A stretch of DNA of 64,000 nt from Octopus sinensis. Lineage: Eukaryota. Shown here one piece after another: positions 7,243 to 62,399 of this stretch. The DNA lies in contig NW_021836291.1 of NCBI RefSeq assembly GCF_006345805.1, positions 248,001-312,000 on the forward strand, read 5' to 3'. How positions within the stretch are numbered: the first letter of the stretch is position 1; each line of letters begins with the position of its first letter. A model generated the notes under the pieces. That model saw only the letters and a program-made list of their open reading frames with translations, was not told the DNA's origin and did not search any database. The translations under genes and the position numbers were made by a program.

Positions 7243-7741
7243 GGTACTTTTGCATTTCATCCTGCACGAAAATAGCCACTAAATGAATTAAGGAAAATTT
7301 TTATAAATATTATATAGAAAATTTAAAAATTGAACTATGCCGATTTTGTAAATTTTATTCTAATTTTTTTTAAAAAAGTGGTGTCAAAACAATACCGACA
7401 AAATTAAATCTGAGCTATTTACGACCACCTGTCTAAAAAGACACAGTTGTTCGTTAATAAAGATGCTTAACATCATCCCCTCAGTGAAAAAATCTTTATT
7501 ACACAAAAAAGGTCAGCTGGTAGTACGCATGTATGGCCGCTCCATTCCAGTTGACTCCGACACCATAAAATACTGTGTCTGTCGAAACTCCACATGTACA
7601 TAAAGCGAATACATGACTGTAAGGTCACTTTCGTGCCTTCGAGCCACGTACCTAAAAATAAAGTACTCTCTTGTACCGTTTCTAATAGAACATTAATTCA
7701 TTTAGTGGCTATTTTCGTGCAGGATGAAATGCAAAAGTACC
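7243..7741. mobile_element. MITE / internally deleted DNA transposon with 49-bp perfect TIRs (Merlin-like)
   Basis: TIR GGTACTTTTGCATTTCATCCTGCACGAAAATAGCCACTAAATGAATTAA at 7243-7291, inverted at 7693-7741, flanked by A-runs. The GGTAC start fits the GGNRM Merlin consensus. Internal remnant ...DSDTIKYCVCRNSTC... resembles a Merlin/IS1016 N-terminus. Superfamily is inferred. Confidence 0.75.
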
Positions 7742-15479: not shown

Positions 15480-18400
15480 GTGTGCATGTACGTTTTCAAG
15501 AAGTCAAGGAAAACGAAACCTATGGGCCTTCCTGCAAATCAAAATAGTTTAAAAAAGACAGGACCGTCGCCTGTGGGACTTCATAATGCCATAAGAGCTA
15601 ATGGTGTTAAAGAAGATCTTGTTGGTGATGTTGCCAAAACTAACTTGCATTCTCTTTCTGCAATCATCGGAAATGTCAATGGTGTCTCTGAAGGCGAATG
15701 GGTGTCTCAGATTGTCCTTGACAAAAGATGATCCGCCCCAAGATATTAATCAAATTACCGATATTCTATATGCTGCATAGTTTGCTTATTTGGCCTTAAC
15801 TACGAGAGCCAGATCACAGAGCACATGGTTGGAAAACACGGAAAGAAAAATCTCTAAATTAGCAGATGAAATTGACACAGTTCGTTTCTTCTCCAGACAA
15901 ACCTTGCCTCAGGCAGAAAAGCAAAAGGCAATGAATGTTCTCTGCCGCTACGGATATAAGAAGTCTAAGAAGGGGGAGCTAACCAGAATTGAGACTCTAT
16001 TGAATGATCTAATTAGAATAAAAAAGAAACAGATATCTATCCATTCCTCGAGGAAGGATTTCCGGAAAGACAATGCGTGTTTTGAATTAAATCGCAGAAG
16101 ATTTTATCGAAATTTATCTTCGAGCAATGAAGCCACCCTATATGGGTTTGGTGATGGTGATTGCTTGTCATTTTGGGAAGATGTCTGGAGCAAGAAAAAT
16201 ATGGGGCCGTAGTTAATGATTTTGTGGGTTTGAGGTGTACTGGCGGTGAAACTATGCGACCTCAATTCACAAGTGATTTTATTATGGATATGCTCAAATA
16301 CGCATCTGACTGGAAGGCATGACGGAACGTATAACTTTTTCTTAAAGAAAATGGATTCTTTGCATGGGTTTCTGTGTAAAGAGTTAGTCCGAATAATTAA
16401 CGGAGAGTACACGCCTAATAGCTGGTTTACACTGGCATAACTTACTTGATCCCTAAAAAAAGTGGTTGTGAGACCCCGAAGGACTTACGCTCTATAACGT
16501 GTATGCCAACTTTGTATAAACTTGTCACCAAATGTGTTAATGCCAAACTGCCCGATTTCATCAAGGCATTTGGCTTAATCTCAGATAATCAGCTCGGGAT
16601 GAGGAAGCAATGTCAAGGCGCCAAAGAGCAAGCCCTCATTAACCAATGCTTAAATAAGAAGTATGGAAATGGCCTCTATTCTGCTTGGGTCGATGTGAAG
16701 AAGGCATTTGACTCAGTTGATTACGAGTACTTGTTCCACGTTTTCGATTGCTTTGGAATACCACATTAGATTGTAAACTTTGTAAAGAACATAGTCAAGA
16801 AGTGGACAGTAAACTTACATATCGATGGGAAAAGAATTGGGAAAGTAAAGTTAGGCCGGGGAATACTCCAAGGAGATTCATTTCCCCGTTGCTATTCGTT
16901 ATGGCGATGGATCCCCTAAGCAGGATGCTTAACTCCATGTTTCCCAAACTCAAAATTAGTCGGGAAGATCCCAATATGTTGACATACTTCACAAATCATT
17001 TCTTCTTTATTGACGATCTGAAAATAGTTGCCCTCATAGAAGATGTGCTAGTTAAAATGATGGAGGCTGTTAATGGATTTTTTAAAAGTGTTGGCCTAGA
17101 GATGAATTCCGAAAAATCAGCATCTAATGTGGAATCTTTATCATGCTGTGAGACTGTGGATGGAATCAACGGATATCAGTACTTGGGTGTACTTGAAGAC
17201 GGCGGAAGTAATGTTCTACAAGAATAAAGTTATGGAATCCATACTAGAGAATGTCAAGAAGAGGATAATGCATTATCCCTATATAATTATTATATCAGGC
17301 TAATCAATATCGAACCTTACGAATTTGATGAAATTGACCAACAAATACGCCGATTACTTACGATTTTAAGTTACACCTCCAGCCTGCAAATAAGGAGAGG
17401 TTGTATTTGGACCGCAAGACGCTTGGAAGAGGACTTGCCTCAATTTCGCCAAAAGCGAATTAATACTCTTCCAGTTTCTTAAAAGTTTGGAAAAACAGTC
17501 GACTACCTGTTTGCGGAGATCGGGTATTTTGCGAGTAATAAAAAGAAAAAAATGGCACTTAGCCACAATCGCAGAATTTCTTGGCAGGGAAAATCTGACC
17601 ATTGAGTTACTGAAGGACGCACAAAGGAAACTCTTGCTTAACCGAATCAACTGTAAATCACTATACTCGGTGATGTTCAAATGTATGGAGGAATCAGATG
17701 TCTACATATCTACTTCTTTGCAATGGCTATCAAAAGAGAACAATGGTCCACGAAGCGAAGCATTGTACTGTCTTTTGCAAGATAGGAATTTGTTCTTTGC
17801 ATACACGGGATCACTATGCGTCCACTGCAAAAAAGCAGGCAGACTGTTGACCACCTAGCCACGCAGTGTGGTAGGATTCTAAACAGTGATTATCTCCAAA
17901 GACACAACGAAGTGGTAAAGTGTATCCATCTCCACTTGTGTCGAATGTATGGAATTAAACGAAGCAGGAAAATGAAAGGACATTCAGTTGTGTCAATAAT
18001 GTCGACTCAAAATGTCGAAATCAGAGTTGACACGTCAATTATTATTATTATTTATTATTATTTAAGCCAAAAAACAGAATCACCGTCTTAACCATTTACT
18101 AACGTGTTCAGGTGATTCCGACACTTCTCAACAGTCGAGCCATCTTTTCACGATGTTCAGACCGTGACCCCACACACTTTCTGTATGTACGGTGAAATGC
18201 TTGTGGTCCATCTCCACGATCCCTCCCACTTGCCTCTACAAGAGACTCCAGTGTTCGATGGACAATTTTCCTGTCGGTATGGTCCTTCAGTAGGTTTATG
18301 GATTTTTCTTGGATTTTCTCGATTTTTAGTTGGTTCGTTGCCGCCAGGTTACAGCCCCAAGCAGCACATGCATAGCCTATTGTTGGCTCGATATACTGCT

Positions 18401-19135
18401 TGTAAAGGGTCTCTACCCCTGGCGGACAAGTTCTTCCACAGTTCCAAAGAAAGGCTTTCACAAAATTAATTTTCTTTATACAAGTTGACACGATCGATTC
18501 AACATGAGGTGAAAAACAGAGGAAAGTATCAAACGTTACACCCAATATCTTCTGTGTTTTCTATGACTGAAACGTAAGTTCAATTCAATAAACCTGATAT
18601 TTTTGTTTATGACAAGAGGAAAAGAGAAATTCATTTAATCGAAGTGGGAGTTACCTCGCAAGACCGTTTAAAGCAAGTTGAAGTGGAGAAATTTCACAAA
18701 TACGACCTCCTTGCAAACGAACTGTAGGTTCTCTATGAAGCAAAAGTGAAGATTATTCCAATTTTCTTGACATGGGATGGAGTTGTCTCAAAGTTCTTAA
18801 AAAGTCATATGAACAAGTTATCCGTTGAAGAACATCCAGTCCGTTGTGCTGAAGAGGACGCTAGAGAGTATGCTTATCGAGCACAGACATGGGATGAAGG
18901 TAGACAACAAGGAATACGCCTCTGCCGCCAATCAATTTGCGGAGCTGGCATGTCGTGAGGACACTCAATTGAATAAATTCATTGACGAGGAAATAGAGAA
19001 TGAAAGAAAGTTTATGGAAAACTCTTCTTCCAAGCGAAGAAGAGAAATCACTGAAGATCTGGATTTTTAACTAGCTACTTTCACGTGATTGTTTTTCTTG
19101 TTACATGTTTGTTGTAAATGAAATAATAATAATGA
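15480..19135 (+). mobile_element. R4/Dong-like RLE non-LTR retrotransposon, near full length, degraded
   Basis: FELNRRRFYRNL, ITCMPTLYKL, QGAKEQALIN, WVDVKKAFDSV, GILQGDSFSPLL, FFIDDLK, CCHC (CVHCKK...HL..QC), RHNEVVKCIH, KPDIF, KYDLLANEL. Many frameshifts. Confidence 0.9.
18041..18562 (-). mobile_element. 5'-truncated LINE 3' end nested in the R4-like element
   Basis: ORF LGVTFD..LCFSPHV...LYKQYIEPTIGYACAAWG with a (TAA)n tail at 18041-18063. It interrupts GACACGTCAATT/ATGACTGAAACG, which is contiguous in the sister copy near 54693. Confidence 0.85.
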
Positions 19136-33651: not shown

Positions 33652-35816
33652 CTAGCTCGGCAGCTCGCTTCGCTCACCGCGACCTAGCTCCTGCGGAGGG
33701 CCTGTTTCATCAAACAACTATAAGTTTATGTAGATGTATAAAACTACCTGGTTTAATGTAACCCTATTCTATCGCCTGTTGATAAACGATGTTTGTCGTC
33801 CGTCCTTCCTTGGCATATATGAATAAATTTTCTCTTCTGCCTACCCTCGAGCATCCCACATACAGATGTCCATGTGAAAAGCACTCACTCTCTAAAAATA
33901 ACCCAACTACCTTTAATGACTGTCACTGGGCCTTGTTTATTGTCATTGCAAAACTCATCCTCAAAGGAAATTGCAGTCTTTTAAATCTAAATGGTAATTC
34001 ATCAGAAATTATCGGAATTCGTGGAATATAAACATCCTCACCTCTATACTTACCTGTTAATATCGTCGCCTCTATTACGTTAGCCATCAAATTTTTGATA
34101 ACTAACCTCGTTCCGTTGCATAATTTAGGTGGCGCAAGATTTCGTAATAAAACCACTGGAACGCCTATCTTTAACTTTAAAAGATGATTCGGCATTCCAG
34201 AGGGATCTAAGGAGTTTAAAAATTCAATCCGGTTGAATTTTTAGAAAATAACAAAAAAATAAAAAAAACAAATAAAAATGAATAATTTAAAAACAAAAAA
34301 TAAAAAAAACAAAAAAAAACTTTAAAAATTTGTAAAATAGTATAAACAAAAAAAATCTCTGCCGCCACGGCAACAACCAGTCTAATTTTTTAACAGCCAA
34401 TTAAGATAATGCTTAAGAGCCTTTATAGTCCGGAGATTTAGCTTAGTGACCTTGATTAGACAAACCACTGGCGGAAATGGGGCAGCCGGAGATGAGGCAG
34501 GCAGAGTAGCAGCAGCCAAAAAAGCGACACACAAAAAAGATTTAATTAATTACCTTAAGCTGACCGTTTTTTCTTCAGCTTCGTTTTTCCTCCTTCGGTT
34601 ATCTATTTAAAAAATTATTTTTGAATAATAAAAAAGTTTAGGAAAAGAGGCATACCGAAAATAAATTCTATCTTTACGAAAAACTTAACTAAATAGTTAA
34701 TATTTTTACGCAAATTCTTCTGATTGCGCTGTCAATTGGTGGTAAATTGTGTTAATGATTGTGCTAATGTGGTTTTAACTATCAAAGTGTTTTTCACACA
34801 CTCTATTCAAAGTCGTGCAATCTGTAATTGCACATTCTGTCAAAGTCAAATATGATAATAGCTTTAATTTTGATTCATGGTCGATAATGATATATGCATT
34901 TAATTTTAAAGAGAAAATCATAGGATGAATTGAATTTCTTTATCGCGAATAATTGGGAGTTCATCATTGTTAATATTCTCGCTGTCGTTTTCATCAAGGA
35001 TATTCTTAATACGTGAGATTTTTGCCTCGAAGGTTTTAATGGACCTCATCATGAATGTCGAGGACATTAACGTTATTCATTTTAATCAAATGCAGAAAAT
35101 AATTTTTTGATTTTTTGGCGGGAAGGTTTTAAGGACCTCATCATGTAAGTCGAGGACATCGTAGTTGTTCATTTTAACCAAAATGCAGAAAATTTTTTTT
35201 TAATTTTTTTTGGGGGGAAGGTTTTAAGGACCTCATCATGTAAGTCGAGGATATCGTAGTTGTTCATTTTAACCAAAATGCAGAAAACTTTTTTTTTAAT
35301 TTTTTTTGGGGGGAAGGCTTTAAGGACCTCATCATGTAAGTCGTGGACATCGTAGTTGTTCATTTTAACCAAAATGCAGAAATTTTTTTTTTAATTTTTT
35401 TTGGGGGGAAGGTTTTAAGGACTTCATCATGTAAGTCGAGGACATGTAGTTGTTCATTTTAACCAAAATGCAGAAAATTTTTTTTTAATTTTTTTGGGGG
35501 GAAGGTTTTAAGGACTTCATCATGTAAGTCGAGGACATTGTAGTTGTTCATTTTAACCAAAATGCAGAAAATTTTTTTTTAATTTTTTTTGGGGGGAAGG
35601 TTTTAAGGACTTCATCATGTAAGTCGAGGACATTGTAGTTGTTCATTTTAACCAAAATGCAGAAAAATTTTTTTTAATTTTTTTAAGGGGGAAGGTTTTA
35701 AGGACCTCATCATGTAAGTCGAGGACATCGTATTGCCAATTTGAAGTTGGTGTGCACACACAGACAGACAGACAGAAAGACAGACAGACACACACCATAC
35801 CATTTTATTATTAAGA
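33652..35816 (-). mobile_element. Non-autonomous Helitron (2165 bp) with PIF1 helicase C-terminal remnant
   Basis: 5' A|TCTTAATAATAAAATG at 35816 and 3' CTAG|T at 33652, with a GC-rich subterminal palindrome. Encodes [23 protein letters not shown]...[25 protein letters not shown]. Confidence 0.92.
35029..35735. repeat. Minisatellite, about 7.5 copies of a 93-96 bp unit, inside the Helitron
   Basis: GGAAGGTTTTAAGGAC(C/T)TCATCATGTAAGTCGAGGACAT... starts at 35121, 35216, 35312, 35407, 35500, 35595 and 35690, with a degenerate copy at 35029. (CAGA)n microsatellite at 35761-35790. Confidence 0.97.
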
Positions 35817-36059
35817 TGGGGTAATTTTTACAACTGGACTTTAAAGAGTGATTTTATTACTAACACGAAATGTGTTCTGTTAGTTTTTGAAACTGTTTGA
35901 GTTATAAAGAAAAGGAAAGTCGTGGTTTATTTATGACATTTACTCTGGCAGCACCTGCTCATTCCCTCTGAAATCACTCATGGCTACTTGGCGAATGTTC
36001 GAGGATAAGTGGCTTTTATATGCCGAAATTTTTTTTTAATTATTAAAAGACAGTTAGAC

Positions 36060-47960: not shown

Positions 47961-48119
47961 AATTAGTTGCTTTCATTTTTAGTTTTGTCAACATGGAATC
48001 TATGACTGATCTAATTTAACAAATTGCCGTTTTAACTAAACTAAAACAACTTAAAATCAAATTTCTAAACCAAATCAATCGTAAAAAGAAATAAGTACAA
48101 ATATGAATAAATCAAAAAA

Positions 48120-49359
48120 CTAGAGAGTACTGTTTGCTAACAACTTCAAAACAAAATTCGGATTCTCCTCCTAAAAATAAACAAAAGAAAAACACATTTT
48201 TGCGGATAAACTCATGAGATGTGCGACAATCAAGGAAATATGACTGAAATATCGACGCAGCTGACGAATATCCATCCAAATCATCACCAAGTTTATTCCT
48301 CAATGCAAACAAAGACAAAATCCTCCACCGAATTGAATCCAAATATCTCTTTGGAAAAGGCCTGATCCCTTCCTCTGACCTCGAATGCTTGGCAGCCTAT
48401 CCAATATAACCCACCAATACATTCCACGGATATCGTACCCCAAATTCCTCCAAACAGTCAGTCAAAGTCCCCAGCCGGTTGGGCCATTTATTCTTATTCT
48501 TGTTTCTAACAAACACAATTGTCCCCAACTAATACTAATTCTTTACTAATACTAACACAAGTATCCAACAAATTCACTGGAAGTGGGAATTTGTGTAGTG
48601 ACAGGAAGTAGGACAGCATTCTCGAGTCGTGGATTATCTGAGTTTTAAAAACTGATATTAAACCTTAACAATGTCAGGATTCTCAAATATTGGCTCCAAT
48701 TGGACTAAAACCTCATGGATATCGAGAAAGGCACAGTCGTAAACAAACACAACCGACTCTGTGGCCAACCAGAGCACAGAAATATCAGTAAAATCAGACT
48801 TGACGGTCAAATATAAGGCAATGGGAGATTTCTCAGCCAGGATTTTAACACTGGTCTGTACTTCTTGAAAATCCTTGTCGATTATGATCTGACAGACATC
48901 CACCAGCATTTCTTGTGGTTTGGGATTTTCGTTTGGGGACTTTTGAAATTTTATTTTCTGTCTATCCTCAATTTTTTTCAAATGTTCTGGTTTTTCGTGT
49001 ATTTCCAAATAGGTTTGCCGGTCTCGACTAAAATAAATTTAATTTAAAAACGTGTTTGTGGCTGGGTTTTGTGTGGAATCAAAATTCAAAAATAATTCAT
49101 CTTTTTTATGCTCAGAAAGCAGTTTTACTAAGATTTATGAGTTGAAATGAAACAATCAAGAAGATAACTGGTTAGAAGTGACAACTGAGGGAGTTTAATA
49201 GCTCCAATTAGATCTTGAACTAGAAATAATGTGAACTAATGTACCGTTTATAAATATTAGATATCCTGTACTTGGATCATATTGGTGTAGGAGACCTTTA
49301 TATTCTCCATCCTGTGTTGTAAATTGATATTTTAATCCAACTTCAAGCTCTTCATTCAT
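48120..49359 (-). CDS. EXD1: EXD1-like protein (N-terminal LSm-like domain plus 3'-5' exonuclease-like domain), multi-exon
   Basis: VGLKYQFTTQDGEYKGLLHQYD (LSm-like); WLATESVVFVYDCAFLD...LEPIFENPDIVKV; TLTDCLEEFGV..WNVL; EENPNFVLKLLANSTL*. Intron at 48171-48195. Domain order matches EXD1. Confidence 0.65.
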
Positions 49360-49681: not shown

Positions 49682-50221
49682 ATGAATATTTTTGTTAAAT
49701 TCACATTTTTATATCAAAAAGGAATCTATCCAACCATATATTTCCGTTCTAACCACTATGAAACGCTTGGAGTCGACAAAACAGCTAAATCAAATGAAAT
49801 AAGAAAATCCTATTTAAACAAATGTAAAATATGTCATCCAGATGTTTCCACTGAACATTCTGATACTTTTCTCCTTTTAAAGGAAGCTTACGATACCCTA
49901 ATAGACCCAGTCCAAAGAGTGGCCTACGACTCGGAGCAACAATTTCACCATCACGTGAAAAAGCCGGCCTCCAAGCCTCGTCATTTTCACCACCAAGTTG
50001 CCAAAAATATGAATTTTCACACAAGGCCGAATATTTGGGCTAATTCTGCCCGTTTAAACCACAGTGTATATTGTGCATATAAAATGAGTGTGAATCGACC
50101 AGTAAAACACGATTTTATTGACAAAACTGACAGGAAAATTACCTACAAGGAGTACCACAACGATTGGCGCCTTTTTTTGTTTGGTGCTATTTTTATTTTT
50201 TGTGTTTTTATTGACTATTAG
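49682..50221 (+). CDS. J-domain (DnaJ) protein with a C-terminal hydrophobic segment
   Basis: HYETLGV...EIRKSY..KCKICHPDV...FLLLKEAYDTLIDP..R..YD (HPD motif). C-terminal WRLFLFGAIFIFCVF. Short introns near the termini cannot be excluded. Confidence 0.88.
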   Translation: MNIFVKFTFLYQKGIYPTIYFRSNHYETLGVDKTAKSNEIRKSYLNKCKICHPDVSTEHSDTFLLLKEAYDTLIDPVQRVAYDSEQQFHHHVKKPASKPRHFHHQVAKNMNFHTRPNIWANSARLNHSVYCAYKMSVNRPVKHDFIDKTDRKITYKEYHNDWRLFLFGAIFIFCVFIDY

Positions 50222-51518: not shown

Positions 51519-54102
51519 TTTTGGTTGAGGTGGATGAACTTGATGAATTCTATTCCACTCTCACAAATTTATACAACACACTCAGATCCTCGTATATGTG
51601 TTTCATTGCTGGTGATTGGAACGCCAGAGCAGGGAAAGCCAGGCCCGGAGAAACATGCATAGGATCCCATGGAAGAAACCGGAGAAATGTGCCTGGAACT
51701 GCCTTGATCCAATTCTGCACCTATTTAGACCTATTCTTATGCAACACGGCATTCCGTCATCCAGCCAGGCACAAAACAACATGGACTGGAACCAGAAAGG
51801 ACTCAAATGGAAATTACATACCTATATTCAATCAAATAGACTACATCCTCTGCAAAGCTGCCCATAAACATCTACTTGTGGATTCACGTTCATACGGGGG
51901 ACTGGAGACAAATAGTGACCACAAACTAGTAATCACTAGCATCGGACTGTACAAGACATACAACAAACTGAAAAAACTTACGCATGATGAACAAGAAAGC
52001 TATAATCTTGAATTATTCCGTGATGAAAAACTCAAACAGAACTATGCAGACAAACTACAGGAAGAACTCGACAATATTGACACAACAAAACCTGCAAATG
52101 CGATTTGGGATGCAGTGACCAGTGCAATGAAGAAGACAGCTGTAAATGTTGTTGGACTCACTCGAAAAAAACACAAATTTCACGATAACGAGATTTGCTC
52201 CCTCTCAGAAAGGCAGAAAACCTTGAGGTTAAAAATACAAAACTCCAGCAACCCGAAAAAAATAAGAGAACTCCGAAAATTACGGAACATGATATTACTA
52301 AATATCAAGAAAACACAGAAATTGCTAATGTACAAAGAAACAGAAGAGCAATTTCAACACATAACAAAACAAAAGGACGACACGAAAATGTTCATGGCAA
52401 TGAGGCTGCTAAACAAAAAAAAGAGGCAAAATTCGATCACTGTCTGGGACACCACGGAAGCGGCTATCATTGACAACAAGAGTAAGGTAGAGGCTATATC
52501 TGAATACTACTACAAAATGCTTAACTGGGAGGATGAATCAGGATACAAACACTACCCATATACTGTAGGGGCACTAAGTTCCCCATTAACCACTTACGAA
52601 ATATTGGAGGCAATGAAGAAACTGAAAACCGGCAGGTCTGGGGGACCGGACAATATCCCACCTGAACTAGTAAAATATGCGCCAATGAAGTTTGCTGAAA
52701 TCGCTGCAAATATCCTGAACAAGGCATTTGAGCAGAACAACCCATTAGACCTCGGCAAAGGATGGTTAATTCCTCTACAGAAACCTGGAAAACAAAAAGG
52801 ACCCCTATCCAGCCTAAGACCTATTATTTTGCTAACGACGCTTCGGAAAACACTGTCGTTGATCGCATTAGAGAGGATAAGAACCAAGGTGGAAAACTTT
52901 CTGTCACCGGGACAAAGTGGCTTTAGAACTGGCAGGTCCACTGCTGATGTGATCTGGACTCACAGATGGACAGCTGCCACATGCCAAAAATATAAACATT
53001 GCACTGAAATACTCGGCATCGATATGTCCAGAGCATTCGACTCGGTTCACAGAACTAAACTTGTGGAAATACTTATGACCTTCTTAAATCATGACGACAT
53101 CAGAATAATCCTAATGCTTCTTCAGAACACTCAATTAGCAACCAAACTTGGTAAAAATGTGTCAAACTATTTCTACACATCACGGGGCATACCACAAGGC
53201 GATTCGCTGTCCCCAGTTCTCTTTATCGTCTACCTAGAGGCAGCACTCAGAGACTTTCGGCCTCTTGTGGACAACACTAAATACAACGAAATAATATATG
53301 CTGATGATGTCGACTTCGTATCTGAAACCCTTCGATTTATTATCGAAACATTACCAGATATTTTTTCCAAATGGTTTCTAACAATCAACCACAATAAAAC
53401 TGAACATACGAAATTTATTCGATCTGAACGAACTCATGATGAGCCCTGGAGAAGACAAAAAAAGTCGGATCTCTCTTAGGGGACTCTGAAGACATTATGC
53501 ACAGAAAAATACTATCAATTGCCACATACAATAAGTTTATGAACATCTGGCGCCTAAAGAAGCTAAATTCAAAGACAAAACTTAAAATATACAACACATT
53601 TGTTGTCCCAGTCCTAATGTACAATGGATCGACGTGGGGAATCAGTAAGACCGATATGAACAATTTGGACCGATTTCATCGGAACCAACTGAGAAGAGTG
53701 ATAAACATGCAATTCTCAAGGAAAATAGCAAATTCCACCCTATACAAAAGATGCAATTCGAGACCGATCTCTATGGACATCCTGGAGTCCAGATGGCGAC
53801 TCTTTGGACACATATTAAGACTTGACAGCCTCACTCCGCCGAATATCGCGATGGAAAACTACTTTGCCCATTCCAAAGGAGACTTCCGTGGAAGACCCAG
53901 GGTCACTCTGGCTACCACGCTAAATGAAGATCTAGCTGGAATTAATAAAAAACTGAAAAATGGCGATGATCTCGACTCACTCAGGACGATCGCAACTGAC
54001 CGGAGAGCCTGGAGACGCATGACCGGGAGAATTTCAATGGTGGCACAAGGAAAGCTTAATTAACTTATGACTTTTCCGAAAGTGCTTTATAATAATAATA
54101 AT
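51519..54102 (+). mobile_element. RTE-clade LINE, 5'-truncated in APE, single frameshift, 13-bp TSD
   Basis: ORFs 51521-53479 and 53497-54063 (GDWNARAG, QIDYIL, SDHKLV, RPIILL, QSGFR, PQGDSLSP, YADD), (TAA)n tail. TSD AATATATTTGGAT at 51506-51518 and 54103-54115. Confidence 0.96.
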
Positions 54103-54229
54103 AATATATTTGGATCGCAAGATGTTGAAAAAGCACTAGCTAAAATTTACTCCAAAAGCGAATTAATACTCTTACAGTTTCTAAAAAGTTTTGAAAAACA
54201 TTCGACGAGTAATAAAAACAAAAAATGAA

Positions 54230-54900
54230 GATTAGCCAGTATTTCTTGTCTTCAAATATGCACTTGTCGACAAGGAAAATCTGGACATTAAGTCACTCAA
54301 GGATGCTTGATGAAAACTCTTGCTTTATCGAATCAACTTTAAATCAATACACTCGGTTATGTTTAAATGTATGGATAAATCAAATGTCGACATTTCTACT
54401 TGACCCTAATCATTATCCAAATGGAATAATTGCTCACGAACCGAAAAATTTTAATGTCTTTTGAATGATAGGAATTTGTTTTTTGGATCACTACTGTAAA
54501 AAGCAGACAGAATGTTGACTATTTATTCACGCGGTGTGGTAGGTGCTAAACAGTGATTATCTCCAAAGACATAATAAAGTGGTAGAGTTTATCCATCTTG
54601 TTATCCAAAAATATAAAATTAAACATAGCAGGAAATTGAAAGGACATTTAGTTGTGTCAATAATGTCGATCAAAAATGTCAAAATCAGGATTGACACGTC
54701 AATTACGACTGAAACGAATTTCAATTTAATAAACCTGACATTTATGACAACAGAAAAAAGAAATAAATTTAATCGAAGTGGGTATTACTTTACAAGACTG
54801 TTAAATCAAGTTGAAGTGGATAAATTTCACAAATAAACTGTCGAATTCTTTATGAAGAAAAAGTAAAATATTATTTCGGTAGTCTTGACATGGAATAGAG
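54230..54900 (+). mobile_element. R4/Dong-like 3' fragment
   Basis: LNSDYLQRHNKVVEFIHL...KLKGHLVVSIMS...RIDTSI...KFHK. Confidence 0.85.
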
Positions 54901-56299: not shown

Positions 56300-56930
56300 T
56301 AAAATATTAACCTCTGTTCAGCAATCTATATTTTTTAATCCATGAATTTTGAAATGCTCTGCCATTTGATTTAGCTTGCTTTGATTTTTTTCCAACTATC
56401 ATAGTCGGTACAGTCAGTACACGTATTCCTGATTCAGAGGAATCCTTCGGTTGACGCCCAATCACTGCTTGCTCCTCTGCGGGAACCGATATTCCATGTC
56501 TTGTCTCCACCTGCATACTCTCCAATGTTTTTCTTAAAACGAGTGTTTGGATATATGCCTTCATTCTGTCTTCCACTGCGATAGAATCCAAATGACTTTT
56601 AAAAAATCTTGAGACAATTCCATTCCAAGTAAGTACAAATATGAATAATTCAAAAAACTAGAGAGTACTGTTTGCTAACAACTTCAAAACAAAATTCGGA
56701 TTCTCCTCCTGAAAATAGACACAAAGAAAAAACACATTTTTGCGGATAAACTCATCTTCATTTTAGCCTGATGAATCGCCCCTAATTCATTTGCCAAAAG
56801 GTCATATTTGTGGGACTTTTCCACTTCAACTTGCTTTAGGCAATTTTGTGAGGTAATCTCAACTTCGGTCTTCTTTAGTGAGTTGCAGTAATTGCATTTA
56901 TTATATTTAGTGAACAATATTAATTATTTT
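56300..56930 (-). mobile_element. R4/Dong-like 3' fragment carrying a 126-bp EXD1-derived insert
   Basis: VEITSQNCLKQVEVEKSHKYDLLANELGAIHQAKMK [insert 56630-56755] VLTWNGIVS...LRKTLESM. Confidence 0.88.
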
Positions 56931-57278: not shown

Positions 57279-59844
57279 ATGATATCTGGTGCTATAATTA
57301 ATAATATACATTTAGATAATGCCCAAGTGCGTAGAAGACGAAATTATAAACTAATCGTAGACCCAGCTCTTAATCAGGGACTAAAAAAAGTGTACAGAAT
57401 TGAAGGCATTGTCCAAGGGGTTCCCTTTCTAGTGTAATCAAAGACATCTTCTCCCTGCACTATTCCAGTCCAAGACCCTCGTAATCAAGTGACCAGAATT
57501 TGGGGAGACTTTAAACCCATTTCTGAGCTGGTCCACCCAAAATTTCGAGTTTGATTGACTTTTTAATACCAAAACAGAAACATGTTTTGGATTCTTTACT
57601 CAAAAATGAAATATCCGAAATACCCTGTCGAGAACTGACATTTACGAATTTAAACGACAATTTTGATATCAATTTTTTGAAAGAAGTGTGTTGTCCATTC
57701 GGGGAGATTGAATCATCAAAGGTTTACATTCATCCGGAGAATGGCAGACATTTAGGCGTGGCTAAAGTGAAATGTCTCTAAAATAATTTAGGTTGTGTTT
57801 AAAGACCCTTCTTCTGCCAGTAGATGCCTAAAAACTGTGGACGGGACTCGAAAAATGGGAATGCAAGTTTCTGTCGAGGCCGATACATTTGGTTGTGGTT
57901 TTTTTAATATTTTAGGTCGGAAAAGAACTCAACTTTTGAAAGATTTGCTTAAAATTCAAGTCGATCGTCCCAAAATTTCATTTTCGATCCAAAATTCCCA
58001 AAATAAATTAGAAAAGTTGTCAAATCCTGCCCAAAATACGTTTATTTGTATTTTTGTTTATAATAACTAATTTTTAGTAAATTCAGTCACTGAGGAGGTG
58101 GTTAAGCTGTTGAGGCACAAGTTAAGGAAGGATATAAAGAGGAAGTTACTCAAAAACGTGGTTTCTCCCTTGGTGGACAAGTTATGTGCATCTTCCAAAG
58201 TTTAGAATCCTTAAATTAAGCCAATTCAGAAACTCAGAAGGAAAAGACATCGCAGAAGAAGTCGAGAAAGGGATCGAAGGTCACATCATAAAGAACGGTC
58301 TAAAAAGTCTAAAAGAACTGACATTTCACGTGATGATCGAAAAAGAAAGGAGAAAGTGTCTAAGAGTGAGCATAGAAATGGAAGGAAGGATGTTAAATAT
58401 CAATCAGTCCAAGAAAATAAAAAGCAGTTTGATAGAAAAAGAGAATCAGTAAAGTCGATCCCCGAACTGGGCCTTTCCGTCGTTGATAAAACACGTGATC
58501 AAAAGAGAGATAAAGACACGTCTATGGACAAAGTGACTCAGATGGAAACAACCAATGTTGATGAGATTAAAAGGAAGCAAGTTGATGAATCGGATAAACC
58601 TGTCAATATAAAACTTGATAACGTGGAGACGGTTGACAAGGTTATGAATGAGGTGACTGTTGGGAATATAAACGGACTAAAAGTCCCGGAATATAAACCA
58701 TGTGAACCACCGTCCCCAGAAGAGGTAAATTGTGTACAAAAAGTCCCGGAATATAAACCATGTGAGCTACAGTCACCAGAAGAGGTAAAAGGTGTAATGT
58801 AATAGTAGATTGAGAGGGATGACACACGTGTGTTATCCAGTCCTGAGGAGTATAGGAGTGTGTATAAAGTTCGTTCAAAAAAGAGTGACATGAAGCTGAT
58901 AAGTGATTACATCACAAATGGGCTTAGTCAGGAAGATATAATGTAGACATGTGGGTTGTTATTCTAGATTTTTAAAGATGGCCTATGAGCAGATGTTGTC
59001 ATTTGATGAGACACCGACATGGCTGCTTTCATCACATTGGGTGGACCATTGTCCCACAATTCAGAAAATATTCCAAGACAGGAAAAAGTATAGTATCCTC
59101 GTTATGTGTAGTCTGAATGTTGTCGGACATTGGATGTTAGTGCACTTAAGGCAATGTCGTGTCGTATTGGAAGGGTGAAGGAGGTGAATAAGAAATGTAG
59201 TAAGGTGGAGTAGTTGGATGTATGATTAGATGTCCGGGGGATATAGTGTGGGGACATATAACATGTCACAAGCCCAGTTCAGTGTACGGGCCACTGGAGA
59301 CCAGAGGAGATTCAATAATGACTTGGCAGGGCTGTTTGATAAGAATAACCTTAAAGTTGTTTTTGGTTGATTTTTGTTTAGTTGCGAAAAAAAATGTTAA
59401 AGTTTAAGAAAAGTGAGATTCATGACTGGGGATTATTTGCTGATGAGCCTATTTGGGTGGATGATTTGGTCATCGAGTATGTGGGGAGTTACATTCGGAT
59501 GAGCCTGGCCGAGATCCGTGAGAAGGAGTACAGGAGGATGGGGATTGATTCGTCATATTTGTTCCGGGTTGACGAATATGGGTGTATTGATGCGACCATG
59601 ATGGGGAATCTTGCTCGGTTTATAAACCACAGTTGCAATGTACAGCTTGATTGGGGTGATTTGACAGCCAAATTGTTCAGCGAGAGTGATTGAGGTGGAT
59701 GGAAAGAAGAAGGTCTGCATATATTGCAGGAGGGATATTGCTCGAGGAGAGGAGATTACATATGATTATAAGTTCAGTTCGGAAGAGGGGGATAAGATTC
59801 CGTGTCACTGTTCTGCACATAATTGTCGCCAACATCTCAACTGA
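57279..59844 (+). CDS. SETD1: Histone H3K4 methyltransferase Set1/SETD1 (RRM plus SET/post-SET), compact, multi-exon
   Basis: [25 protein letters not shown]...[34 protein letters not shown]|PNCSA, ITYDYKF, IPCHC...CR. Introns include 57289-57315, 57420-57443 and 59640-59667. Confidence 0.95.
58679..58798 (+). repeat. 60-nt coding tandem duplication in SETD1
   Basis: [20 protein letters not shown] / [20 protein letters not shown]. Confidence 0.95.
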
Positions 59845-59993
59845 TTATATTTTGTGTGAATAAAATATTTTTTAATTTTATATCAGAATGACTGTTCCAA
59901 AGAATCTTTATTGCGATTCTGACTGGCGACGTTTTTTTGATCATTATTAGTTTTAGATCAAAACTACCTTAATTTCTGTGAATAGTACACATA

Positions 59994-61461
59994 CACCCCT
60001 CGTCACTGAAAACCGGACAAGCTATTTTTGATGATTTTATTAATTAAATATGAAAAATCAAAAACTTAAGCTTAATATTTTTACTTAATAATAATAATTG
60101 TGTAATAATTATTAATTATACTATTATAGAACTAATATTTAAAGCAGAATTTCAATTTACTTAAGACATGTAAAACCGGACAAGAATAAAAACAAGTCAT
60201 TTAGTAGTTAATATGTCCACCATTTGCACTGAAAATTTTATAACATCTATTTTTCATAGACATTACTAGTTTTTTCAATAATTCTGGTGATATATTATTC
60301 CATATTTCTGTTAATTTGTCCTTTAGTTCATTTTGTTTTTGACTACATTTTTGATAATTCTCTCTTCATTTCTGTCCATAGATGTTCTATCGGGTTTAGA
60401 TCCGGTGATCGAGCAGGCCATTGAAGTAAAATAATGTTTTTTTCTTTAATATAATCTTGTATCATTTTAGATTTATGGCAAGGTGCATTATCCTGTTGTA
60501 AAATAAATGAGTCTATCCCGAATTTTTTGGCACATTCGAATATATTATTAGATAAAATATTAATATATTTTGCGCTATTAAGAATTTCATCAATAAAAAC
60601 AAGATTACCGACTCCGTTATACGAGAAACTGCCCCAGACCATTACTTTTCCACCACCGAATTTTACAGTTGGGATAATATTGCATTTTTTGTATGCAGAA
60701 CCATTTTCTCTATACACTATTTGATGCTTATTGATATTAAAAATATCAAAAGACCATTCATCAGTAAAAATTACCGACTTCCATGTCTCGTCGGAAATGC
60801 TTAAAAATGATTTTGTAATTTCACGTCTTAAAATTATATTTTTTGTGGATTAAAGAGGTTTTCTTTTAGCAGCTCGGCCATATAATCCTTTCTTATTTAA
60901 AATTCGAGATACTATTCTTGTGAAAATTTTTTTTGAACATAGTTTTAATTTCGATGCTAAGAGTTTTGGCACTTTTATGAGGGGTATTATTTGATAGTTC
61001 TACTAAAATCAAAATTTCTTCCTCTATCAATATTTTCTTTCTTTCAGTTCCCGGATGTATGTTAATTGATACAGTTTTTGTGAATTTCTGAATCACATCT
61101 GATACAGTTGATTTTGGGACTCATATACTTGCAGAAATCATTCGATAAGTCACATTATGATTATAAAATGCAATAATTTGTCCTTTCAGGAAATCTGAAA
61201 GGTGACTTCTTCTTTGACTATACATTTTTAGCTTCTTTTCAACGACTTTTAGATCTATAAAAGTTTTGTCCGGTTTTACATGTCTTAAGTAAATTGAAAT
61301 TCTGCTTTAAATATTAGTTCTATGATAGTATAATTAATAATTATTACACAATTATTTTTTATTTTTATTTTTTTAAATATTAAGCGTAAGTTTTTGATTT
61401 TTCGTATTTAATTAATAAAATCATAAAAAATGGCTTGTCCGGTTTTCGGTGACGAGGGGTG
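59994..61461 (-). mobile_element. Tc1-family DD34E transposon with long IR/DR termini, pseudogenised
   Basis: TIRs of about 190 bp (59994-60184 and 61266-61461) starting CACCCCTCGTCAC with TA TSD. AAAACCGGACAA direct repeats at both ends of each TIR. QQDNAPCH...NPIE gives 34 residues between D and E. Confidence 0.96.
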
Positions 61462-62399
61462 TATATTGTATTATGTTTTTTAATAATAAGGACAAAGAAA
61501 GATGAGATGAGAAGGACAAAGAAAGATTTGCCAAAGTGACAGTAAATCAGTTATCATTAAAGCAGGGATTTACAGCAAGCTTGCGTGTATAACTACAAAG
61601 AGAAGATAATTTGTATATGAAAATATCATCAACAAAGAAATTTCAAACTTATATTCAGATAACTGCGTGATTGAGTTGGACCAAAATGATATCAATATTT
61701 AAAGTTTCAAATTACCTAAACTTATTGAAATCAAAAATATAACCGTTTTAGAATACCCGCAGCATGCTGCAAATATTAACAGCCTTGTTTAAATTTATTC
61801 TCAAATTTTATTTTTTTATATGCTAATATTAATTTTGTTTTTTTGTTTAAATATAAGTTAAGTTTGGCTTGTTTAAAATTTATGAAAATTTTCCGATCTC
61901 AAGCTATACGAACGGGACTTTCAATTTCTGTTTATCATTTACTTAAAATGTGTTAGATAATACTTGGAGTGAGCTTTGCTGCTCTGATTCAAATAACTAA
62001 GCGTAATTACAGAAATCGACGTGTTCACACAGTTATAATAATGATTATAATTAGACTAGCGTTCAAGTCAGAGTGGAGATTTCGGTCTAGCACAGACAAT
62101 GCCCACATTAGAGTCGGAACTTGAGGTGTGTTTAATTTATAAAGTTAGAAATACAAGAGGAATAAAGTGGGGGAAAATTGGTCTAACGTACGAATATATC
62201 GCCACAGTGAACAAAATTAAATACATCTAATTACGATTTCTTTTTTTCTAAAATATATTTTCAATAAGATTTGTTAGTTTTTAGAGTTTTGATTCTCAGG
62301 AAGAGTCTGAAAGTGTTAAAAATCTTTTGGAGAACAATCCTTAATTATTTGACATAATTTTAAATTTCTTAATATAAAGTCAAAATAAAGATGTTGATA

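What the first reader, a model, noticed from the sequence alone, without database searches (positions are those of the whole stretch)
56630..56755. Unspliced 3' end of the EXD1-like gene copied into a retroelement 8.5 kb away
Seen: 56630-56755 matches 48092-48215 (end of the previous exon, the 25-nt intron, last exon, stop and 3' UTR start) in the same orientation. It interrupts the R4-like ORF between ...QAKMK and VLTWNG. The last exon of about 50 nt is identical while the intron differs at several positions yet keeps GT...AG. The UTR end resembles the element's own ATTATTCC..T.GTACTTA sequence. Inference: a DNA-level templated insertion driven by microhomology rather than a retrocopy. It places sequence of a piRNA-pathway gene inside TE sequence, where TE-derived small RNAs could target it. 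The exon-conserved, intron-diverged pattern hints at a donor allele or paralogue.
Basis: partly seen in the sequence, partly recalled or inferred. Interest (0 to 1): 0.7.

Follow-up and report, generated by a model that had tools for sequence, protein, structure and literature searches.

The report
Gene tail copied into dead retroelement
A 115-base piece from the end of a neighbouring EXD1-like gene, its tiny last intron included, was pasted into a dead retrotransposon fragment 8.5 kb away by a repair or replication slip guided by short matching sequences; it is a clean but ordinary mutational scar with no shown function.

Summary
Window 56630-56755 matches 48092-48215 in the same orientation (126 vs 124 nt, 5 differences, E about 1e-53), and the window holds only these two copies. 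Nine other copies of the same retroelement family lack the segment: three in the window and six fetched from contigs filed as Octopus sinensis. The closest five give the empty site GTGAAGAT|AATCCCTG|TTGTACTTACTTGG. The element therefore lost 8 nt and gained 115 nt. The junctions show 2 nt (AT) and 9 nt (TTGTACTTA) of microhomology with the donor. There is no target-site duplication, poly(A) or terminal repeat. The donor is the 3' end of a compact gene with 22-28 nt GT-AG introns. Its product aligns from Lsm domain to nuclease core with a protein whose best solved relative is EXD1. The copy spans the end of the penultimate exon, a 25-nt putative intron, the last exon with its stop codon, and 28 nt beyond. 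An RNA (pre-mRNA) template is not excluded. The piRNA idea and the "R4-like" label remain untested. The genome looks dicyemid-like. Interest is low to moderate.

The parts
56639..56753 (-). 115 nt present only in this element copy, copied from the EXD1-like gene's 3' end
   Evidence: It is absent from L001-L006 and from window copies A, C and D. In the closest five copies it replaces 8 nt, AATCCCTG.
56630..56638 (-). Right junction microhomology TTGTACTTA (9 nt), shared by the native element and the gene
   Evidence: The 9-mer is present in empty-site copies L001-L004 and at gene position 48100-48092. In the window it occurs only at these two sites, and the chance of a 9-nt match is about 8e-6.
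56754..56755 (-). Left junction microhomology AT (2 nt)
   Evidence: The native element reads AAGAT|AATCC and the gene reads CTCAT|GAGTT.
56709..56735 (-). Copy of the gene's putative last intron (27 nt, GT...CAG)
   Evidence: It differs from the gene's 25-nt version by +T, +G and two T>C changes.
56658..56708 (-). Copy of the last exon (51 nt including the TAG stop), identical to the gene
48092..48215 (-). Donor segment: 20 nt of the penultimate exon, the 25-nt intron (48195-48171), the last exon with stop (48170-48120) and 28 nt of 3' flank
48120..49359 (-). EXD1-like gene (Lsm-like N-terminus plus degenerate 3'-5' exonuclease-like core), compact, with 22-28 nt GT-AG introns
   Evidence: Gene model. 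Remote homologue P0010 found at E=2e-8. P0010 has LSM14-like and DNA_pol_A_exo1 domains. Its best PDB match is EXD1 5fiq. The alignment with P0010 is collinear over residues 14-288.
56392..56866 (-). 5'-truncated fragment (copy B) of a non-LTR retrotransposon; its open frame runs on to 56307
   Evidence: It is 87-96% identical to L001-L004 on both sides of the insert. Protein identity to P0001 is 81%.
18640..18811 (+). Same site in another copy of the family (copy A), uninterrupted: ...EAKVKIIPIFLTWDGVVSKF
   Evidence: (I3)

Best explanation
A break or stalled replication fork arose inside a dead, 5'-truncated retrotransposon fragment (copy B). It was resolved by template switching. The free 3' end paired through short homology with the 3' end of the EXD1-like gene 8.5 kb away on the same strand. 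About 115 nt were copied there: the end of the penultimate exon, the tiny intron, the last exon with its stop, and the start of the 3' flank. Synthesis then returned to the element 8 nt from where it had left. The result is a net 8-nt deletion plus a 115-nt templated insertion, with 9-nt and 2-nt junction microhomologies. This belongs to the MMBIR/FoSTeS or synthesis-dependent end-joining class of events. The donor gene is unchanged, and the insert breaks an ORF that was already non-functional. Shown here: the copy, the empty site, the junctions and the gene-to-element direction. Inferred: the enzymology, a DNA rather than RNA template, and the absence of function.
For: The two-copy match has E=9e-54. 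Nine insert-free family members keep a continuous ORF at the site. The empty site GTGAAGAT|AATCCCTG|TTGTACTTA is conserved in the closest copies L001-L004 (the fifth, L005, is more diverged there). The junction overlaps are 2 nt and 9 nt, and the 9-mer is unique to these two sites in the window, p about 8e-6. No poly(A), target-site duplication or terminal repeats are present, and 8 nt of the recipient were lost. The inserted piece has the exon / 25-nt GT-AG intron / exon layout typical of this genome's genes: other introns of the same gene are 24-26 nt GTTT...YAG, and a ~28-nt intron splits the SET domain of a neighbouring gene. So the segment is of genic origin. The shared segment's left end coincides, within 2 nt, with the insertion's left end in the element. 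That is expected if the element is the recipient. Donor and recipient lie in cis, in the same orientation, 8,540 nt apart.
Against: No reads were available, so the junctions are not independently confirmed. Only 64 kb of the window plus 122 kb of contigs that may not come from the same species could be searched for further copies. Four of the five differences fall in the 25/27-nt intron (about 15% divergence there against about 1% elsewhere), which is odd for a recent neutral copy. It needs either slippage-prone T runs, error-prone synthesis, or a different donor allele. Templates of MMBIR-type insertions seen in a yeast system lay within 100 bp of the insertion site (PMC8421209), not 8.5 kb away. 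A pre-mRNA template would give the same product.
Confidence: 0.72

Rival explanations
1. The product is the same, but the template was RNA. An unspliced or intron-retaining transcript of the neighbouring gene was reverse-transcribed into the break. This could have happened during target-primed reverse transcription of the element itself, by template jumping with return, or through a repair polymerase with reverse-transcriptase activity.
For: The insert is in sense orientation to both the gene and the element. It lies wholly within the likely transcribed 3' end of the gene. The recipient is a 5'-truncated product of reverse transcription. The stronger microhomology (9 nt) sits at the junction where minus-strand cDNA synthesis would leave the element RNA, and the weaker one (2 nt) sits at the return.
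Against: The intron is present. No poly(A) is present, and the copy does not end at an obvious transcript end. From general knowledge, R2-type template jumping goes from the 5' end of one RNA to the 3' end of another, not internal-to-internal with a return 8 nt away. The closeness in cis (8.5 kb) follows naturally from a DNA template, but for an RNA template it needs an extra assumption.
Confidence: 0.15
2. The direction was the reverse. The element copy already carried the extra segment, and the EXD1-like gene acquired its last 124 nt, including its C-terminal exon, from the element.
For: The homology-validated part of the protein stops 6 residues before the shared segment, so the gene's tail is not confirmed as ancestral. 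The last 9 nt of the shared segment are native element sequence.
Against: The extra 115 nt would then have no source. They are absent from nine relatives of the element. The fragment taken by the gene would have to start, by coincidence, within 2 nt of the insert's own left boundary, which is well under 1% for a random fragment of a ~500-nt element. The segment also has the exon/tiny-intron/exon layout of a gene, not of an element.
Confidence: 0.04
3. The 115-126-mer is an independent dispersed repeat or small mobile element that landed in both places.
For: Only about 186 kb could be searched, so a low-copy repeat cannot be ruled out.
Against: Only two copies exist in the window. None was found in L001-L006, and an exact 31-mer scan of metagenome contigs found none. 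No terminal inverted repeats, target-site duplication or poly(A) are present, and the element site lost 8 nt instead of gaining a duplication. In the gene, the reading frame runs straight into the segment.
Confidence: 0.04
4. The insert is an assembly artefact (a chimeric path).
For: No read-level evidence was available.
Against: Both flanks continue in the same element copy. The overlaps of 2 and 9 nt are far below assembler k-mer or overlap lengths. The copy differs from the gene at 5 positions, so it is not a simple mis-join of the same reads.
Confidence: 0.03

Closest known systems
Microhomology-mediated templated insertions (MMBIR / FoSTeS template switching; MMB-TIs of Osia et al. 2021, PMC8421209)
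   Same: The inserted tract has an identifiable template elsewhere. Microhomology is present at both switch points. A few recipient bases were lost, and transposition hallmarks are absent.
   Different: The template lies 8.5 kb away, whereas templates in the yeast system described in that paper lay within 100 bp of the insertion site. The insert is a single 115-nt tract. The event is fixed in a germline genome of a dicyemid-like animal, not in a tumour or yeast assay.
Templated sequence insertions from distant loci at double-strand breaks (Onozawa et al. 2014, recalled from my own knowledge, not read here)
   Same: These are tracts of about 100-300 nt copied from a distant transcribed region, and they may include intronic sequence. 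The class without poly(A) or target-site duplication resembles this case.
   Different: Those events were proposed to use RNA templates, often from other chromosomes. Here the donor is a close neighbour in cis, and the template type is unresolved.
Processed retrocopy / LINE-mediated transduction
   Same: Gene sequence ends up next to or inside retroelement sequence in sense orientation.
   Different: The intron is retained. There is no poly(A) or target-site duplication. The insertion is internal to the element and comes with an 8-nt deletion.
EXD1 (PIWI-EXD1-TDRD12 complex component; PMC4712191, PDB 5fiq)
   Same: The donor gene's product has an Lsm-like N-terminus followed by an exonuclease-like core. 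It is collinear with a protein whose best solved relative is EXD1.
   Different: The sequence is very divergent, with no direct Pfam or PDB sequence hit. Only about 28 residues follow the core, where EXD1 has a three-helix dimerisation hook. Orthology and any piRNA role are unshown.

Membership tests
Microhomology-mediated templated insertion (MMBIR/FoSTeS/SD-MMEJ class) | The inserted tract is a copy of sequence present elsewhere in the genome | tested here: met
   The 124/126-nt match has E=9e-54.
Microhomology-mediated templated insertion (MMBIR/FoSTeS/SD-MMEJ class) | Microhomology between recipient flank and donor at both junctions | tested here: met
   The overlaps are AT (2 nt) and TTGTACTTA (9 nt), read against five empty-site copies.
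Microhomology-mediated templated insertion (MMBIR/FoSTeS/SD-MMEJ class) | No transposition hallmarks (target-site duplication, poly(A), terminal repeats); small loss at the recipient site | tested here: met
   Eight nt (AATCCCTG) were lost, and direct reading of the flanks shows no duplication or tail.
Microhomology-mediated templated insertion (MMBIR/FoSTeS/SD-MMEJ class) | DNA (not RNA) served as template | not testable with these tools
   Retention of the intron fits either DNA or pre-mRNA.
Processed retrocopy | Introns removed, poly(A) tail present, target-site duplication present | tested here: not met
   A 27-nt GT...AG stretch is retained, and there is no A-run or duplication at the junctions.
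Dispersed repeat / small mobile element | Multiple independent copies with their own ends | tested here: not met
   Two copies exist in the 64-kb window. None was found in 122 kb of related contigs or in the metagenome scan. The whole genome was not available.
EXD1 family (donor gene) | N-terminal Lsm-like domain followed by a 3'-5' exonuclease-like core | tested here: inconclusive
   No direct Pfam hit at E<=1. Through P0010 (E=2e-8), which has LSM14-like and DNA_pol_A_exo1 domains and matches EXD1 5fiq at 9e-28, the alignment is collinear over residues 14-288.
EXD1 family (donor gene) | Catalytically inactive core, C-terminal dimerisation hook, binding to TDRD12/PIWI (PMC4712191) | not tested
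   Catalytic residues were not aligned. Only about 28 residues follow the core. Interaction partners cannot be tested here.
R4 clade of non-LTR retrotransposons (recipient) | Reverse transcriptase domain | tested here: met
   RVT_1 is found in family copy A. In PDB, R2 and L1 reverse transcriptases are matched about equally well.
R4 clade of non-LTR retrotransposons (recipient) | C-terminal CCHC motif plus restriction-enzyme-like endonuclease | tested here: inconclusive
   Motifs C..C..H..C, KPDIF and EVEKxHKY are seen by eye in P0005-P0007. No library model or PDB sequence hit supports them.
R4 clade of non-LTR retrotransposons (recipient) | Placement within the R4/Dong clade by reverse-transcriptase phylogeny; target-site specificity | not tested
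   No reference set was available.

The most novel reading that the evidence does not exclude
The element-embedded sense copy of the EXD1-like 3' end (71 nt of exon plus 28 nt of 3' flank, nearly identical to the gene) is processed together with the element into antisense small RNAs. These would target the EXD1-like mRNA, giving a feedback loop in which transposon silencing regulates one of its own cofactors in a dicyemid-like animal.
Probability: 0.03. Interest if true: 0.6.

Novelty: new member of a known kind. Interest (0 to 1): 0.25.

Why it matters
This is a textbook-clean natural example of a templated insertion. Donor, recipient, empty site and both junctions are all readable, and it sits in a poorly studied, highly reduced animal genome with roughly 25-nt introns. 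It can serve as a marker for this repair or replication-slippage pathway. It is also a caution for annotation, because gene fragments inside transposons can mimic exons. On present evidence it has no functional consequence. The more useful by-product is that several contigs filed under Octopus sinensis carry the same element families, a shared satellite and tiny-intron genes, so they probably come from a dicyemid parasite.

Tried and rejected
1. A search for an orthologue of the EXD1-like gene, meant to validate its last intron and exon, found nothing. The word-indexed protein search gave no hit. The PDB sequence search and Pfam also gave nothing.
2. An exact look-up of the neighbouring DnaJ-like ORF found no record. 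The homologue search with it returned only one distant protein. No syntenic locus from another assembly could therefore be obtained.
3. I first suspected that about 20 nt at the 3' end of the shared segment were native element sequence, which would have favoured element-to-gene copying. DNA of the element's own subfamily showed that only the 9-mer TTGTACTTA is native, so I rejected this.
4. I considered ciliate genetic codes because of the 25-nt intron. The standard code and animal-type genes fit better.
5. An exact scan of metagenome contigs for the exon 31-mer gave 0 hits.
6. Clade assignment of the element from PDB reverse-transcriptase matches did not discriminate, because R2 and L1 scored about equally. 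The C-terminal domain had no PDB sequence hit.

Full report
**Observation.** Read on the minus strand, 56755..56630 (126 nt) and 48215..48092 (124 nt) align end to end with five differences.
- BLASTN gives 95% identity over 129 columns, E = 9e-54. Neither BLASTN nor the repeat finder finds a third copy in the window.
- The two copies are 8,540 nt apart and in the same orientation.
- Four of the five differences lie in a 25/27-nt GT...AG stretch: an extra T in a T run, an extra G, and two T>C changes. The fifth is a T>A change 9 nt after the stop codon.
- The 20 nt before that stretch and the 51 nt after it, including the TAG stop, are identical.

**What the recipient is.** The segment sits in a minus-strand open frame that reads ...KYDLLANELGAIHQAKMK before it and VLTWNGIVSRFFKSHLDSIAVEDR... 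after it. The two parts are out of frame with each other.
- With the insert removed, the protein matches eight "uncharacterized proteins" annotated in Octopus sinensis, up to 81% identical. All read through the site as AKVK-IIPVV-LTWDGIVSRF.
- Three further copies of the family lie in the window (A at about 15.4-19.07 kb, C at about 54.1-54.9 kb, D at about 27.7-28.2 kb). They are also uninterrupted at this site.
- Family copy A has an RVT_1 reverse transcriptase. Relatives show a CCHC motif and a KPD...E.EK motif by eye. The element therefore looks like a non-LTR retrotransposon with a restriction-enzyme-like endonuclease.
- The "R4-like" clade label could not be tested. R2 and L1 reverse transcriptases in PDB are matched about equally well, and the C-terminal domain has no PDB sequence hit.
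- The copy carrying the insert (copy B) is a 5'-truncated fragment. Its homology to relatives starts at 56866 and runs to at least 56392.

**The empty site and the junctions.** I fetched the DNA around six of the octopus-assembly proteins (L001-L006). None carries the insert.
- Five of these copies (L001-L005) are the closest relatives. Four of them (L001-L004) read GCTAAAGTGAAGAT AAT(C/T)CCTG TTGTACTTA followed by (C/A)(T/A/C)TGG. L005 also lacks the insert but is more diverged at this spot.
- Copy B reads GCTAAAATGAAGAT + 115 nt + TTGTACTTA CTTGG.
- The gene reads ...CATCTCAT + the same 113 nt (with a 2-nt shorter intron) + TTGTACTTA TTTCTT.
- The element therefore lost 8 nt (AATCCCTG) and gained 115 nt (56753..56639). 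The overlaps with the donor are 2 nt (AT) on the left and 9 nt (TTGTACTTA) on the right.
- That 9-mer occurs nowhere else on either strand of the window. A 9-nt chance match at a junction has p of about 8e-6 at this base composition.
- There is no target-site duplication, A-run or terminal repeat.

**What the donor is.** The region 49359-48120 (minus strand) holds a compact gene.
- Its coding pieces are joined by 22-28 nt GT...AG introns such as GTTTAATATCAGTTTTTAAAACTCAG.
- The conceptual protein has no direct hit in the word-indexed protein search, Pfam or PDB sequences.
- An exhaustive HMMER scan finds P0010 at E = 2e-8. P0010 has an LSM14-like Sm domain plus DNA_pol_A_exo1, and its best solved relative is EXD1 (5fiq, E = 9e-28).
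- The pairwise alignment is collinear from residue 14 to residue 288. It crosses at least two junctions of the model (the 26-nt and 22-nt introns) without a gap, for example DIVK|IIHDSR against IVKVIHDSR. That supports both the "EXD1-like" label and the tiny introns.
- EXD1 is an inactive nuclease that acts as an RNA adaptor with TDRD12 and PIWI (PMC4712191).
- The alignment stops six residues before the shared segment. The last intron (48195-48171, 25 nt) and the last exon (EENPNFVLKLLANSTL*) therefore rest on their typical intron form and reading frame only. A 23-nt alternative donor site and an unspliced read-through ORF also exist.

**Direction of copying.** Three observations point from gene to element.
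- Nine relatives of the element lack the segment and keep the ORF intact.
- The shared segment begins within 2 nt of where the insertion begins in the element. This is automatic if the element is the recipient, and a coincidence of well under 1% if the gene had taken a random fragment of the element.
- The segment has the exon / tiny intron / exon / stop layout of this genome's genes.

I had first suspected the opposite direction, because the segment's last 20 nt seemed to align with native element sequence. The subfamily DNA reduced that overlap to the 9-nt microhomology.

**Mechanism.** The anatomy is one templated tract, microhomology at both switches, a small deletion, and a donor close by in cis in the same orientation. 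This is the anatomy of template switching during break repair or replication: MMBIR/FoSTeS, or synthesis-dependent microhomology-mediated end joining (class described in PMC8421209).
- It is not a retrocopy, since the intron is retained and there is no poly(A) or target-site duplication.
- A pre-mRNA template cannot be excluded. The orientation, and the stronger microhomology on the side where cDNA synthesis would leave the element RNA, are compatible with it.
- The cis proximity and the internal leave-and-return pattern favour DNA.
- I put about 0.72 on a DNA-level templated insertion and about 0.15 on an RNA-templated version.
- Four of the five differences cluster in the intron-like stretch of 25/27 nt. 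The stretch is T-rich and one of the changes is an extra T in a T run, so slippage, error-prone synthesis or a different donor allele could each account for the cluster. A paralogue is not required. No second EXD1-like copy exists in the window.

**Consequences.** The recipient was already a dead fragment, and the donor is untouched. The idea that element-derived small RNAs could now target the EXD1-like mRNA is possible in principle, but nothing here supports it. Even the presence of a PIWI pathway in this organism is unknown to me.

**Source organism (inference).** The window has 35% G+C, is about half transposons by eye, and has introns of about 25 nt. Dicyema japonicum, a kidney parasite of octopus, is reported at 36.7% G+C, 48.9% repeats and a mean intron of 38 bp (PMC6736024). 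The element's relatives all lie on contigs of the Octopus sinensis assembly GCA_006345805.1. One of those contigs carries a Peptidase_M24 gene that is equally compact. The window is therefore most likely dicyemid DNA, and those contigs are likely parasite contamination.

**Verdict.** The finding is a clean new example of a known kind of mutation, with low functional interest on present evidence.

Noticed in passing
L001-L006 (GCA_006345805.1 contigs VCDQ01000570.1, 5811.1, 2782.1, 12182.1, 10273.1, 6889.1); L002 19056-20420: Contigs filed as Octopus sinensis share the window's transposon families and a 95-nt satellite. They also carry a very compact Peptidase_M24 gene whose frame shifts suggest tiny introns. 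With the window's roughly 25-nt introns and 35% G+C, this points to dicyemid parasite DNA annotated as host genes.
   Followed up: partly
window 35001-35817: A tandem array of a roughly 95-nt unit, with at least 7 copies, is 92-94% identical to an array in L001 (1990-3554).
   Followed up: no
window 59991-61464: A Tc1/mariner-like element has long terminal inverted repeats (94 + 90 nt blocks, 94-98% complementary) and a DDE_3 ORF at 60343-60717 (minus strand). It lies just downstream of the SET1-like gene.
   Followed up: no
window 57551-59840: A compact SET1-like gene has an RRM-like start and a SET/post-SET end. A roughly 28-nt intron splits NHSC|PNC. This is a second example of tiny introns in the window.
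   Followed up: partly
window 51521-54063: An RTE-like non-LTR element (weak endonuclease/exonuclease/phosphatase match plus RVT_1) has long open frames of 652 and 188 aa and may be recently active. It is immediately followed by copy C of the element family studied here (54147-54900, plus strand), which converges on copy B.
   Followed up: no
window 18092-18618: Copy A of the element family is split by a nested opposite-strand fragment of another retroelement (ORF 18108-18545, minus strand).
   Followed up: no
window 7243-7291 / 7693-7741: A perfect 49-nt inverted repeat has arms 401 nt apart. The same ends occur in L001 (14051-14126), so it is MITE-like.
   Followed up: no
window 49682-50221: A single-exon DnaJ-like ORF of 179 aa lies head to head with the EXD1-like gene, with about 320 nt between their start codons. 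No close homologue was found in the protein collection.
   Followed up: partly
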